16,244 bases of DNA from Vitrella brassicaformis CCMP3155 (lineage: Eukaryota > Protista > Chromerida). This document shows, piece after piece, positions 189 through 16,244 of this stretch. Where the stretch lies: the NCBI GenBank assembly GCA_001179505.1, contig CDMY01000834.1, positions 1-16,244 on the forward strand, read 5' to 3'. Within the stretch, counting starts at the first letter, position 1; each line of letters opens with the position of its first letter. A program made the position numbers and the translations under genes. The notes beneath the pieces are model-generated. The model saw nothing but the letters and a program-made list of their open reading frames with translations, had not been told where the DNA came from and did not search any database.

Positions 189-387
189 CACGATCTTATC
201 AGCCATCACCGAAGTGAGATCTGTGTTGACCACCCTTCATGATGCCATACATGGACAGAAACAACTTTGACTGGCCAGTCCATCGGTCTTATTGAAGTAA
301 AAGCACTCTTACTCTGGGACTTACCGCCCAGCAGATCCTCTATTCAGCTAACTACAGGAAAGGTCCTCACCGGCCTTTTTCGCACAC
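189..387 (+). repeat. Left arm of a ~200-bp long-range inverted repeat (partner 16042-16244)
   Basis: CACGATCTTATCAGCC...GGCCTTTTTCGCACAC is the reverse complement of 16042-16244, with 3 substitutions and one 4-nt (GACT) indel by manual alignment. Confidence 0.97.
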
Positions 388-13800: not shown

Positions 13801-14165
13801 TTGCGAGCTGTTCTGCGATCGTGTCCGAGCTCGCACAGGCTGCTCGTTCCCAGCTCACGGACCCGACGGACCCGGCTGGCGAGTCGTAATGATAATCTGC
13901 ATCGGACCGATTTGCGTGCCTCTTTGGTGAGCCAATATACTCGAGACAGTTGAACAGGCTCTGTGGTGAGTTGTTGGGTCGCGTGTGTGAGAGCTCAGGC
14001 ACGTCGGTCTCCTGTTGGCCTTTCTGTTCAAGCCTGCCTACCGATGGGCAAGACGAAAATGCGGATACGAAGGTGCGTGCGGGCGGACGACTGTTCTGAC
14101 ACATACGAACACACCACTACCCTTGCGGTCGTGTTCTTATCAGAAGCTGAAGAGACCTCCGCCAT
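10834..14165 (-). CDS. Large multi-exon protein of unknown function (Ser/Pro-rich regions plus coiled coil)
   Basis: Proposed exon 1 is 14165-14042 (MAEVSSAS...RIRIFVLPI), then an 81-nt GTAGGC..CACAG intron, then exon 2 at 13960-13458 (..EPVQLSRVYWLT..FRGFKIDA|GTAAGC). The long exon from the 12275-13408 ORF follows, then KWPWWRARWLAHVEKALEGRRKKLVDLCQKAFLDNAK, LLIDEWDTQLANL...LKRLERTE and VEDARKVIAAF...PQPMQHTK*. Phases are consistent at the junctions checked; the 5' end is less certain than the body. Confidence 0.75.
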
Positions 14166-14676
14166 GACAAAGCAGAATATGTCCGGCAACCCACCACCTG
14201 ACGCACCTGCGGAGCACACAGAGGAGACGACAAACGACGCCGCTGGAGCCACTCTTCGCCGCAGGCCGGTCAGCAGAGTGGCCGACAGCGACGGCAGGGG
14301 CGGCTGCGTGGATGTGCACACACCCGAGGAATGGCAAAACGTGTGCAAGAGAGCCTCGGACGGCGGGCTGCCGATCGTGCTGGCTGTCGGTGCGTCGTGG
14401 TGCAAGCCATGCAAGCACATTGCCCCAGTGTTCAGGAGCCTGGCGCAGCAGCACAGGGGCCTGTTTGTGTCGGTTGATGTGGACGAGATGGCTGACTTGG
14501 CTGAGGAGGCAGCGGCGAGAGCCCTGCCGACCTTCCAGATCTGGAGGCCGGACGACGGCAGAAGGGTGGCCAAGACGACGTACGAGCTAGTCGGCGCTGT
14601 TGAGGCGTCCCTGAGGAGTTTTGTGGCTGACCACTGTGAGGCACATGGCCACTGCGATGATGTGACTGCCAACTGA
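14164..14676 (+). CDS. Thioredoxin-domain protein (WCKPC), single exon
   Basis: IVLAVGASWCKPCKHIAPVFRSLAQQHRGLFVSVDVDEMADLAEEAAARALPTFQIW matches the thioredoxin fold pattern (WCxPC active site, DVD, cis-Pro PTF). The start is either 14164 (GCC ATG) or 14179. Confidence 0.9.
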   Translation: MTKQNMSGNPPPDAPAEHTEETTNDAAGATLRRRPVSRVADSDGRGGCVDVHTPEEWQNVCKRASDGGLPIVLAVGASWCKPCKHIAPVFRSLAQQHRGLFVSVDVDEMADLAEEAAARALPTFQIWRPDDGRRVAKTTYELVGAVEASLRSFVADHCEAHGHCDDVTAN

Positions 14677-15203
14677 CACGTGGGTGCATTGAGTGCTTGC
14701 GGAGGCTGGCAGGGCAGCACTTTCTGTATTGATCTTTTTTCCGTGCTGTGCTTCCCTCTGCTGCTGAGTTCTGTACAGACAGACACGTCCATGTGTGGTG
14801 ACTGACATTCTCATTCATCCATCCATCAAAAGAGTCTCGAGTCCCTCGCGGCCCATATTCTACACTCTCACTGCATTGAGCTGGGCACACCAGCTGACTG
14901 ACTGTGTTGACTGATGCATGGCATGCACAAGGCCAACAACTCCACTGCAAAAACAGTCGCATCGTCGTTCAGCCACGTGTCGACCACATCTCCTGCATTG
15001 ATCACGTTCACAAACGCCCCTCGAGAGTTTGCTGAGCGCGTGTGTGCCCCAGTAAGCTCTTCACGGCAAGCAGTTGCTGACGGCATCAATGGCAGAAGGA
15101 GCGCTACACGCGTCCCTTGCATCTCGGAACCTCATTGACAGATTCACACACAGACAGATCAGGCAGGCAGGCAGGCATGCAGCGTCGTCTAGAGAGGGTC
15201 TCC

Positions 15204-15908
15204 TCAGTCCTCTGCGGTCAGCGTGCGGAAGCCTGACAGATCCATATCCAGAAGCAGACACACAGATGTGCCTTGTGGCTGGTCTGGCTGTCTGTGGGCC
15301 TGTCTGCCCGTCTGCCTGTGTGGGTGAGGTGACTGACTGACCGAATCCCATAGCGACAACGGGGATGAAGAGGCAGAAGATGGGCACAAACAGCTTCGGA
15401 CCTGACAAGAATACATGAATACACCCATACAGGCATGCCTCACGGCCGCACATCACTCCACCAGCGGTTAGTGGGTGGTCAGAGTCTATGCATGGCACCC
15501 CACTCCCACCCACGTGCGTACCGATGTCGCTGAACCCAGTCGGTGCCTCCATATTGCCAACTTTGCCCTTGTAGGCAATCAGCTCGTTGAACCCCGCACC
15601 CAGCATGTCCAGGAAGGCCGGGTCCGTCGCGCTGTCGAGGGTCGCGCTGTCCAACACCATCTGCGGACTTGTCTGCAACGCACCAACACATCCACCGCAC
15701 ACACGAACCGCACTCATTATTTGACTAACGGTACGTGGTCAGTGTGAGATAGAGTGAATGAGTGAGTGACCCTTCTTTCGACAGCTCGTCGGTTGGCGCT
15801 TTGCCTGAGGATGTTGCCGCTGAGAGCATTTGCGGGCCTCTGCACAAAGGCTGAGGCAGCAACCATCAGGCACACGGCCACCAGGGCGAGGAGCGGAACT
15901 CTCATCAT
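15204..15908 (-). CDS. psaI: Nucleus-encoded, plastid-targeted photosystem I subunit VIII (PsaI)-like protein, 4 exons, 125 aa
   Basis: Exons are 15908-15771, 15672-15522, 15401-15342 and 15232-15204 (phases 0,1,1). Product: MMRVPLLALVAVCLMVAASA|FVQRPANALSGNILRQSANRRAVERRTSPQM-VLDSATLDSATDPAFLDMLGAGFNELIAYKGKVGNMEAPTGFSDIGPKLFVPIFCLFIPVVAMGFGFRTLTAED*. It has a signal peptide with ASA|F and an Arg/Ser-rich transit peptide. The C-terminal P-x-x-FVP-x3-L-x2-P-x2-AM-x3-F pattern matches PsaI as I recall it. The exon 1 donor (GTCACT) is weak; an alternative in-phase GTACCG donor exists. Confidence 0.75.
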
Positions 15909-15978
15909 GGCTCTGTGAAGCAGCACAAAGAGAGGCCCGAGTGTGTTTACGGAATCTCTGGTGAGGTTCCTCGACGCC

Positions 15979-16006
15979 AAACCCTACACCCCGAACCCTA
16001 CCCTGA
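15979..16006 (+). repeat. Degenerate telomere-like/telo-box motifs (AAACCCTA, GAACCCTA, CCCTGA)
   Basis: AAACCCTA at 15979-15986, GAACCCTA at 15993-16000, then CCCTGA. They lie between the psaI start and the right inverted-repeat arm. Confidence 0.35.
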
Positions 16007-16041
16007 TGAGATTTCATTTGATGAGGAAGCATGGGCACAGA

Positions 16042-16244
16042 GTGTGCGAAAAAGGCCGGTGAGGACCTTTCCTGTAGTTAGCTGAATAGAGGATCTGCTG
16101 AGCGGTAAGTCCCAGAGTAAGAGTGCTTTTCCTTTAATAAGACCGATGGACTGGCCAGTCAGTCAAAGTTGTTTCTGTCCATGTATGGCATCATGAAGGG
16201 TGGTCAACACAGATCTCACTTCGGTGATGGCTGATAAGATCGTG
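16042..16244 (-). repeat. Right arm of the long-range inverted repeat (truncated by window end)
   Basis: Reverse complement of 189-387 with a 4-nt GACT duplication. Similarity continues to the last base, so the outer boundary is not visible. Confidence 0.97.

What the first reader, a model, noticed from the sequence alone, without database searches (positions are those of the whole stretch)
15204..15908. Cryptic nucleus-encoded PsaI with a bipartite plastid presequence, split over tiny exons
Seen in the sequence: four GT-AG exons join in phase into a 125-aa protein with a signal peptide, ASA|F, a transit peptide and a C-terminal single helix SDIGPKLFVPIFCLFIPVVAMGFGFRTLTAED. Established: PsaI is a ~30-40 aa PSI subunit with an (S/A)xLPxIFVPxxGLxxPxxxMxxxF pattern. 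It is normally plastid-encoded, and chromerids have been described as lacking several small photosystem subunits. Inference: this is a psaI transferred to the nucleus. Its conserved part is split across exons of 60 and 29 nt, so homology surveys could easily miss it.
Basis: partly seen in the sequence, partly recalled or inferred. Interest (0 to 1): 0.85.

Follow-up and report, generated by a model that had tools for sequence, protein, structure and literature searches.

The report
Vitrella nuclear PsaI gene, already annotated
This is a real, spliced and strongly expressed nuclear gene of the alga Vitrella brassicaformis for the small photosystem I subunit PsaI, which a 2017 paper scored as lost; public databases already hold the gene model and name it PsaI, so it is a correct reading and not a discovery.

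Summary
Four GT-AG exons on the minus strand (15908-15771, 15672-15522, 15401-15342, 15232-15204) join into a 125-aa protein. All three junctions appear in two independent transcript contigs and in three RNA runs, and not in a DNA run. An environmental relative about 91% identical in DNA keeps the frame and the splice sites (pN/pS 0.12).

The C-terminal helix matches three independent PsaI profiles and no other family:
- Pfam PSI_8: 19.9-20.0 bits against a cut-off of 19.8.
- NCBIfam NF008830: E 8e-6.
- NCBIfam TIGR03052: E 5e-4.

The best solved-structure hits are PsaI chains. None of 3000 shuffles reaches the real score.

The window is a Vitrella brassicaformis CCMP3155 contig. The gene is not cryptic. 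The protein is CEM34848.1 / A0A0G4GVG4, and UniRef already names it "Photosystem I reaction center subunit VIII". In the sister alga Chromera velia, cryo-EM (PDB 9HYU, Dec 2025) showed that "Unknown 3" is a nuclear PsaI with a lumenal N-terminal extension.

What remains mildly new:
- The published "psaI lost in Vitrella" (2017) is wrong.
- Vitrella PsaI also carries an acidic N-terminal extension of about 50 aa.

I could not obtain the Chromera sequence, so I could not test whether the two extensions are homologous. The scan has noted similar "lost" PSI subunits (PsaF-PsaJ, PsaM-like) elsewhere in this genome.

The parts
16002..16075 (-). 5' UTR exon, used in the two JGI transcript contigs. 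It lies partly inside the contig's terminal inverted repeat (16042-16244).
   Evidence: L001 1-74 and L003 1-81 align here at 100%. X1/X2 contigs instead run unspliced up to 15934/15926, so the 5' end is variable or the assemblies differ.
15913..16001 (-). 5' UTR intron (GT..AG on the minus strand, 89 nt)
   Evidence: Gap between the L001/L003 blocks. Boundary bases read.
15849..15908 (-). Start codon and signal peptide, aa 1-20 (MMRVPLLALVAVCLMVAASA), with predicted cleavage ASA|F
   Evidence: One of only two hydrophobic segments in the protein. Kyte-Doolittle 19-residue windows reach up to 2.63, with A-S-A at -3..-1 and F at +1. Cleavage is inferred, not tested.
15771..15848 (-). Transit-peptide-like region, aa 21-46 (FVQRPANALSGNILRQSANRRAVERR). 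End of coding exon 1.
   Evidence: 26 aa with 6 Arg, 1 Glu and net charge +5, against net -5 for the next 50 aa. The end point of the transit peptide is inferred.
15673..15770 (-). Intron 1 (98 nt, GT..AG)
   Evidence: Retained in transcript contig L003.
15522..15672 (-). Coding exon 2: acidic N-terminal extension of the mature protein (aa 47-96), predicted mostly helical with an amphipathic stretch around aa 60-84
   Evidence: The low-confidence AlphaFold model has helices at 9-15 and 18-38 of the mature part. No convincing homologue was found.
15402..15521 (-). Intron 2 (120 nt, GT..AG; in frame and without a stop, so a plain ORF reads through it)
15342..15401 (-). Coding exon 3 (60 nt): core of the PsaI transmembrane helix, PKLFVPIFCLFIPVVAMGF
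   Evidence: Pfam PSI_8 positions 2-20 of 25 align here. The PsaI-invariant P, F, P, P, V, M are kept.
15233..15341 (-). Intron 3 (109 nt, GT..AG)
15204..15232 (-). Coding part of the last exon (GFRTLTAED + TGA): end of the helix and a short stromal tail
   Evidence: The NCBIfam PsaI profiles align through to the last residue.
15000..15203 (-). 3' UTR, at least to 15000. Transcript contigs continue to 14142, where they merge with the convergent thioredoxin-like gene on the + strand.
   Evidence: X1/X2 contigs are colinear from 15231 down to 15000. L001/L003 are colinear from 15233 to 14142.

Best explanation
The gene encodes the precursor of PsaI (photosystem I reaction centre subunit VIII) of Vitrella brassicaformis. 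The gene has moved from the plastid to the nucleus.

Shown here:
- The four-exon mRNA exists and is abundant.
- The frame is under purifying selection.
- The last ~30 residues are a PsaI-type transmembrane helix.

Inferred:
- The N-terminal 20 residues act as an ER signal peptide, cleaved at ASA|F.
- The Phe then exposed, together with the Arg-rich 26-residue stretch, takes the protein across the inner membranes of the four-membrane plastid.
- After stromal processing, a mature protein of about 79 aa and 8.3 kDa inserts into the thylakoid. Its single helix sits beside PsaL and PsaB, as in every solved PSI.
- The acidic N-terminal extension of about 50 aa lies on the lumenal side and the 8-residue tail on the stromal side.
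- By analogy with Chromera PsaI, the extension probably packs against a lumenal loop of PsaB.
For: Gene structure and expression.

Purifying selection:
- Environmental relative L002 differs at 15 of 378 exon bases, 11 synonymous and 4 conservative.
- pN/pS is 0.12, Fisher p 6e-5.
- There are no indels in the exons.
- All GT/AG sites are kept.
- The introns are 84-87% identical over their aligned parts and carry indels.

PsaI identity:
- Pfam PF00796: E 6e-4, 19.9-20.0 bits against a gathering score of 19.8 on the C-terminal 38-40 aa. The only other Pfam family listed (DUF5325) is about 7 bits weaker and far below its own cut-off.
- NCBIfam NF008830: E 7.7e-6. TIGR03052: E 4.6e-4.
- phmmer against PDB puts PsaI chains in the top three places, 16 of 18 hits in all.
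- An HMM built only from three bona fide PsaI segments scores the real sequence 24.5 bits. The best of 3000 shuffles scores 13.2, the reversed sequence 0.4 and the signal peptide -0.1.

Database name: UniRef calls the identical protein PSI subunit VIII.

Precedent: Chromera 'Unknown 3' is PsaI with a lumenal N-terminal extension contacting PsaB (PMC12830998).

Presequence features.
Against: - The profile scores are marginal. The full-length protein scores 17.9 bits, below Pfam's 19.8. Both NCBIfam scores are far below their equivalog cut-offs of 50 and 38.2.
- No protein-level evidence for Vitrella PSI was available.
- Sobotka 2017 did not list PsaI among the Vitrella PSI spots.
- An exhaustive phmmer search with the mature part found no Chromera or dinoflagellate relative at E <= 1e-3. 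Orthology with Chromera PsaI is therefore assumed, not shown.
- The structure model is of low confidence (pLDDT 58).
- The flanking charges give no clear positive-inside signal.
Confidence: 0.85

Rival explanations
1. It is a PsaI-derived single-helix plastid protein that no longer sits in PSI. Its conserved helix would be reused elsewhere, for example as an assembly factor or in another thylakoid complex, and the new N-terminal domain would carry the function.
For: - Scores lie below the curated equivalog cut-offs.
- A 50-aa extension without homologues makes up most of the mature protein.
- PsaI was not reported in Vitrella PSI gel spots.
Against: - The PsaI-invariant residues are all kept.
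- RNA word depth is very high, as expected of a photosystem subunit.
- Chromera's equally extended PsaI is physically in PSI.
- No psaI was found elsewhere in Vitrella according to PMC5643376, yet PsaL, which PsaI stabilises, is present.
Confidence: 0.08
2. It is an unrelated plastid-targeted single-pass membrane protein whose helix resembles PsaI by chance or by convergence of Pro/Phe-rich helices.
For: The match covers only about 25-28 residues. E-values are 1e-3 to 1e-5 in family-library scans and 0.016 at best against PDB.
Against: - Three independently built PsaI models all rank first.
- The three best solved-structure hits, out of 177,635 distinct sequences, are PsaI.
- 0 of 3000 composition-matched shuffles come within 11 bits of the real score.
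Confidence: 0.05
3. It is not a real gene: a chance chain of ORF pieces with GT-AG borders.
For: None beyond the small size of the exons.
Against: - Spliced transcripts occur in five independent RNA data sets.
- pN/pS is 0.12 against an environmental relative, with the splice sites conserved.
Confidence: 0.01

Closest known systems
Chromera velia PsaI (formerly 'Unknown 3', Cvel_6643; PDB 9HYU; PMC12830998)
   Same: Both are nucleus-encoded chromerid PsaI proteins first scored as lost. Both have a single PsaI helix and an N-terminal extension, which in Chromera lies on the lumenal side against a PsaB loop.
   Different: The Chromera precursor is 22.5 kDa against 13.4 kDa here. It also has a C-terminal extension that helps form the SOD platform, whereas the Vitrella tail is only 8 residues. 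The Chromera sequence was not retrievable here and was not detected by phmmer from the Vitrella query. Homology of the two extensions is therefore untested. The Vitrella helix is close enough to the canon to hit Pfam.
Symbiodinium PsaI (PDB 8JJR chain i, 179 aa)
   Same: It is a nuclear-encoded, extended PsaI in a related alveolate lineage with a red-derived plastid.
   Different: It is much more divergent. It matches the PsaI profile only at E 0.21 over 15 positions, and it is longer.
Nuclear PsaI of chlorophycean green algae (PDB 6IJJ chain I, 106 aa; 9MGW chain I 'PSAI1', 109 aa)
   Same: PsaI is made as a precursor of about 105-110 aa with the PsaI helix at the C-terminal end. This shows that transfer of psaI to the nucleus is not unique.
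   Different: These are primary plastids, so a simple transit peptide is expected instead of a signal peptide plus transit peptide (from general knowledge). No large mature N-terminal extension is known to me.
Canonical plastid or cyanobacterial PsaI (e.g. PDB 1JB0 chain I, 38 aa; Pfam PF00796)
   Same: It shares the helix motif P-x-x-F-x-P-x(6)-P-x-V-x-M-x(3)-F. Identity is 36-42% over the helix.
   Different: Those proteins are 30-40 aa, are encoded in the organelle or bacterial genome, and have no presequence, no introns and no N-terminal domain.

Membership tests
PsaI / PSI_8 (Pfam PF00796) | Score at or above Pfam's gathering threshold (19.8 bits) | tested here: inconclusive
   The isolated C-terminal 38-40 aa scores 20.0 and 19.9 bits, which just passes. 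The mature part scores 18.2 and the full precursor 17.9, which just fail. It is the top family in every case.
PsaI (NCBIfam NF008830 / TIGR03052 equivalogs) | Score above the curated equivalog cut-off | tested here: not met
   25.6 bits against a cut-off of 50, and 20.0 against 38.2. The E-values are significant (7.7e-6 and 4.6e-4). The cut-offs are tuned to bacterial and plastid-encoded proteins, so this lowers 'equivalog by rule' but not homology.
PsaI | Conserved helix residues (Pro, Phe, Pro, Pro, Val, Met, Phe in register) within a single transmembrane helix | tested here: met
   Seven invariant columns are shared with Thermosynechococcus-type and Dunaliella PsaI segments. There is one hydrophobic segment at aa 98-118 besides the signal peptide. 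The shuffle control gave 0 of 3000.
PsaI | Physical subunit of PSI next to PsaL and PsaB, with the N-terminus in the lumen | not testable with these tools
   This needs PSI proteomics or cryo-EM of Vitrella. It has been shown only for the Chromera counterpart (PMC12830998).
Nucleus-encoded proteins of complex red plastids (bipartite leader) | Signal peptide with an AxA-type cleavage site followed by Phe at +1, then a basic, acid-poor transit peptide | tested here: met
   This was tested by sequence inspection only. The hydrophobic core spans aa 4-19, the site is ASA|F, and aa 21-46 carry net charge +5. No SignalP or ASAFind run was possible, and cleavage has not been shown.
Endosymbiotic gene transfer of psaI | psaI absent from the plastid genome of the same organism | not tested
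   Taken from PMC5643376, which scored psaI absent in Vitrella. The plastid genome was not available to the tools.

The most novel reading that the evidence does not exclude
The acidic N-terminal extension of about 50 aa in Vitrella PsaI is homologous to, and works like, the lumenal extension of Chromera PsaI that seals a new PsaB loop. The extension would then predate the split of the two chromerids. It could not have arisen as a Chromera-specific compensation for the split PsaA and reduced antenna, as the 2025 structure paper proposes. Together with the nuclear PsaF-PsaJ and PsaM-like genes noted elsewhere in this genome, the 'extensive loss' of small PSI subunits in chromerids would be largely an artefact of surveys missing short, diverged nuclear genes.
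Probability: 0.35. Interest if true: 0.4.

Novelty: already known. Interest (0 to 1): 0.25.

Why it matters
The finding corrects a published table. Sobotka et al. 2017 list psaI as lost from Vitrella, and part of the argument for 'extensive loss of PSI subunits in chromerids' rests on that. The gene is present, spliced, highly expressed and conserved.

It also offers a comparison point for the Chromera PSI structure. Vitrella has an intact PsaA, yet its PsaI still carries an N-terminal extension, which bears on why that extension evolved.

Beyond that it is an ordinary case of organelle-to-nucleus gene transfer. A public database already names the protein correctly.

Tried and rejected
- **Word-indexed protein search.** I queried with the exon2-intron2-exon3 read-through and with the C-terminal region. 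Only the protein itself and one environmental near-copy came back.
- **Exhaustive phmmer of the mature part against 1.8 billion representatives.** Besides self, the hits were long TPR/CHAT-type and 'helicase-associated'-type repeat proteins. They match a short FNELIAYK-like motif 4-7 times. I judged these repeat-amplified chance matches, not relatives.
- **Finding Chromera PsaI (9HYU chain I) in the solved-structure sequence set.** It was not among the phmmer hits, nor among the 60 shown of 63 hits to a small PsaI profile. The paper has no supplement held as text.
- **Scan of metagenome contigs with the mature protein.** 226 pattern matches, none confirmed.
- **AlphaFold without an alignment.** pLDDT was 57.9, and Foldseek against PDB returned only meaningless matches at E about 8. 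I draw no conclusion from either.
- **ESM Atlas features.** The best scores were 0.76-0.78, below the level of evidence. One of the top three clusters is a eukaryotic 'PSI subunit VIII family' of about 112 aa. This is a lead only.
- **Identity with Vitrella 'Un1' (Vbra_13060, 12,117 Da), a spot co-migrating with PSI in Sobotka 2017.** I could not resolve whether it is this protein. The precursor mass here is 13,382 Da, or 11,340 Da without the signal peptide. That table also repeats the same mass for PsbE. Neither the held supplement nor the text search of other papers helped.
- **Rfam scan of the window.** No RNA family was found.

Full report
**Observation**

The feature lies on the minus strand. 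I joined 15908-15771, 15672-15522, 15401-15342 and 15232-15204. This gives 378 nt in frame: a 125-aa protein ending in TGA. The introns are 98, 120 and 109 nt, each beginning GT and ending AG (sequence). Intron 2 is in frame and has no stop, so a plain ORF list shows a 218-aa read-through.

**Is it a real gene?**

Yes, on several independent lines.

- The protein database holds the spliced product. Entry P0001 (124 aa) comes from JGI. P0003 (125 aa) comes from NCBI, UniRef, MMETSP and EukProt.
- JGI contig L001 carries the ORF without interruption. It aligns to the window at 100% identity in blocks that end exactly at the proposed junctions. It also shows a further 5' UTR exon at 16075-16002.
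- A second transcript contig, L003, splices introns 2 and 3 and keeps intron 1.
- In RNA runs X1, X2 and X3, one contig each skips 109, 120 and 98 bases, with CT..AC on the + strand. Word depths are 1523, 447 and about 7. Run X5 holds the colinear genomic form and none of these joints, so the spliced form is RNA and not a processed DNA copy.
- An ENA metagenome contig (L002) carries a relative about 91% identical in DNA. Its exons differ at 15 of 378 positions without any indel: 11 synonymous changes and 4 conservative replacements (L>F, S>N, Y>F, I>L).
- In that same contig pN/pS is 0.12 (Fisher p 6e-5), all donor and acceptor dinucleotides are kept, and the introns are 84-87% identical over their aligned parts, with indels.
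- The 3' part of L002 folds back on itself, which looks like an assembly artefact. Its exon 4 was therefore read from the other strand of that contig.

**What is it?**

The C-terminal 38-40 residues hit Pfam PSI_8 (PF00796) at E 6e-4, scoring 19.9-20.0 bits against a gathering score of 19.8. The only other family listed is DUF5325, at 12.8-12.9 bits against a cut-off of 25. The full precursor scores 17.9 bits.

Two NCBIfam PsaI models also rank first, NF008830 at E 7.7e-6 and TIGR03052 at E 4.6e-4. Both align through to the last residue, and both fall below their strict equivalog cut-offs.

phmmer against all solved-structure sequences puts PsaI chains in the first three places. PsaI accounts for 16 of the 18 hits.

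In an alignment with Thermosynechococcus-type and Dunaliella PsaI segments, seven columns (P, F, P, P, V, M, F) are invariant.

As a control, I built an HMM from those three bona fide segments alone:

| Sequence scored | Bits |
|---|---|
| Vitrella C-terminus | 24.5 |
| Best of 3000 composition-preserving shuffles | 13.2 |
| Reversed sequence | 0.4 |
| Signal peptide | -0.1 |

The resemblance is specific, not a by-product of a hydrophobic composition.

**Anatomy of the precursor**

| Residues | Feature | Details |
|---|---|---|
| 1-20 | Signal peptide | Hydrophobic; ends A-S-A, followed by Phe |
| 21-46 | Transit-peptide-like | 6 Arg, 1 Glu, net charge +5 |
| 47-96 | N-terminal extension | Net charge -5; predicted largely helical with an amphipathic stretch |
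| 98-118 | Transmembrane helix | The only other hydrophobic segment |
| last 8 (RTLTAED) | Stromal tail | Short |

The layout ASA|F plus a basic stretch is what established work on complex red plastids describes for bipartite leaders. I had no SignalP or ASAFind, so cleavage sites and the mature N-terminus are inferred.

There is no second hydrophobic segment that could act as a thylakoid signal. The acidic extension must therefore cross the thylakoid membrane as an N-tail if PsaI keeps its usual orientation (N-terminus in the lumen). How this happens is open.

**Origin and what is already known**

The exact 125-aa sequence is CEM34848.1 of Vitrella brassicaformis CCMP3155, on a contig of 16,244 bases, which is this window. 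UniRef100_A0A0G4GVG4 names it "Photosystem I reaction center subunit VIII". The gene is therefore neither unannotated nor unnamed.

In the literature held here:

- Sobotka et al. 2017 (PMC5643376) scored psaI as absent from Chromera and Vitrella. They concluded that Chromera PSI lost PsaI while gaining unknown subunits Un1-3.
- The 2025 cryo-EM structure of Chromera PSI (PMC12830998, PDB 9HYU) showed that Un3 (Cvel_6643) is PsaI.
- In that structure a lumenal N-terminal extension stabilises a PsaB loop, and a C-terminal extension supports the SOD platform. A parallel preprint agrees.
- No held paper reports a Vitrella PsaI, and the 2025 paper does not discuss one.
- Solved structures also include nuclear PsaI precursors of 106-109 aa from chlorophycean algae and a 179-aa PsaI from Symbiodinium. 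A nuclear psaI is therefore not rare.

**What I could not settle**

I could not retrieve the Chromera PsaI sequence.

- phmmer from the Vitrella protein does not find it in the solved-structure set.
- The exhaustive search of 1.8 billion representatives found no Chromera or dinoflagellate relative at E <= 1e-3.
- A metagenome scan found nothing.

Orthology with Chromera PsaI, and above all homology of the two N-terminal extensions, is therefore untested. The only non-self hits to the extension are repeat proteins matching a short motif several times, which I regard as chance.

The single-sequence AlphaFold model is of low confidence, and its Foldseek matches are meaningless.

I could not determine whether the Vitrella PSI-associated spot 'Un1' (Vbra_13060) of the 2017 paper is this protein.

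**Verdict**

The claim of a hidden gene is not, because the model and the name are already public. The remaining value is twofold:

- It corrects the 2017 'lost in Vitrella' call, in line with other notes from this scan on PsaF-PsaJ and a PsaM-like gene in the same genome (not tested here).
- It raises the question of whether the PsaI extension is shared by both chromerids.

Noticed in passing
window 189-387 and 16042-16244: There is a terminal inverted repeat of about 200 nt at both ends of the contig (arms of 120 nt at 98% and 85 nt at 100% complementarity). In DNA-like run X5 the right arm has a word depth up to about 31,000 against about 23 for the neighbouring single-copy DNA. It is also deep in the RNA runs. 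It therefore belongs to a very high-copy, transcribed repeat family. No Rfam family matches. The 5' UTR exon of the PsaI transcript contigs starts inside it.
   Followed up: partly
window 13843-14700, + strand: A convergent neighbouring gene encodes a thioredoxin-like protein (WCKPCK motif in the ORF 13963-14676). It has introns at about 13928-13997 and 14073-14141. Its transcript overlaps the PsaI 3' UTR, so unstranded assemblies join the two mRNAs into one contig (L001 and L003).
   Followed up: partly
L003 81-477 (window 15913-15517): One transcript assembly retains intron 1 of the PsaI gene while splicing introns 2 and 3. The gene caller then starts at an internal Met and gives a 75-aa product (P0004) lacking the presequence. 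This is probably unspliced pre-mRNA and not a functional isoform.
   Followed up: no
L002 (ENA ERZ893784, contig k147_5645806): An environmental metagenome holds a Vitrella-like organism. Its PsaI gene is 96% identical in the exons and 84-87% identical in the aligned parts of the introns. The contig's 3' end folds back on itself (window 15133-15375 in the opposite orientation), most likely an assembly chimera.
   Followed up: partly
window 15150-15190 and 15290-15320: Short CAGG/CTGT-type microsatellite stretches in the 3' UTR and in intron 3 attract many loose ends and odd low-depth joints in the read layouts (tables 5 and 7). These look like repeat cross-matches, not alternative splicing.
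   Followed up: no
window 15980-16005: Two AACCCT units (telomere-repeat-like hexamers) lie just inside the right terminal repeat, within the 5' UTR intron.
   Followed up: no
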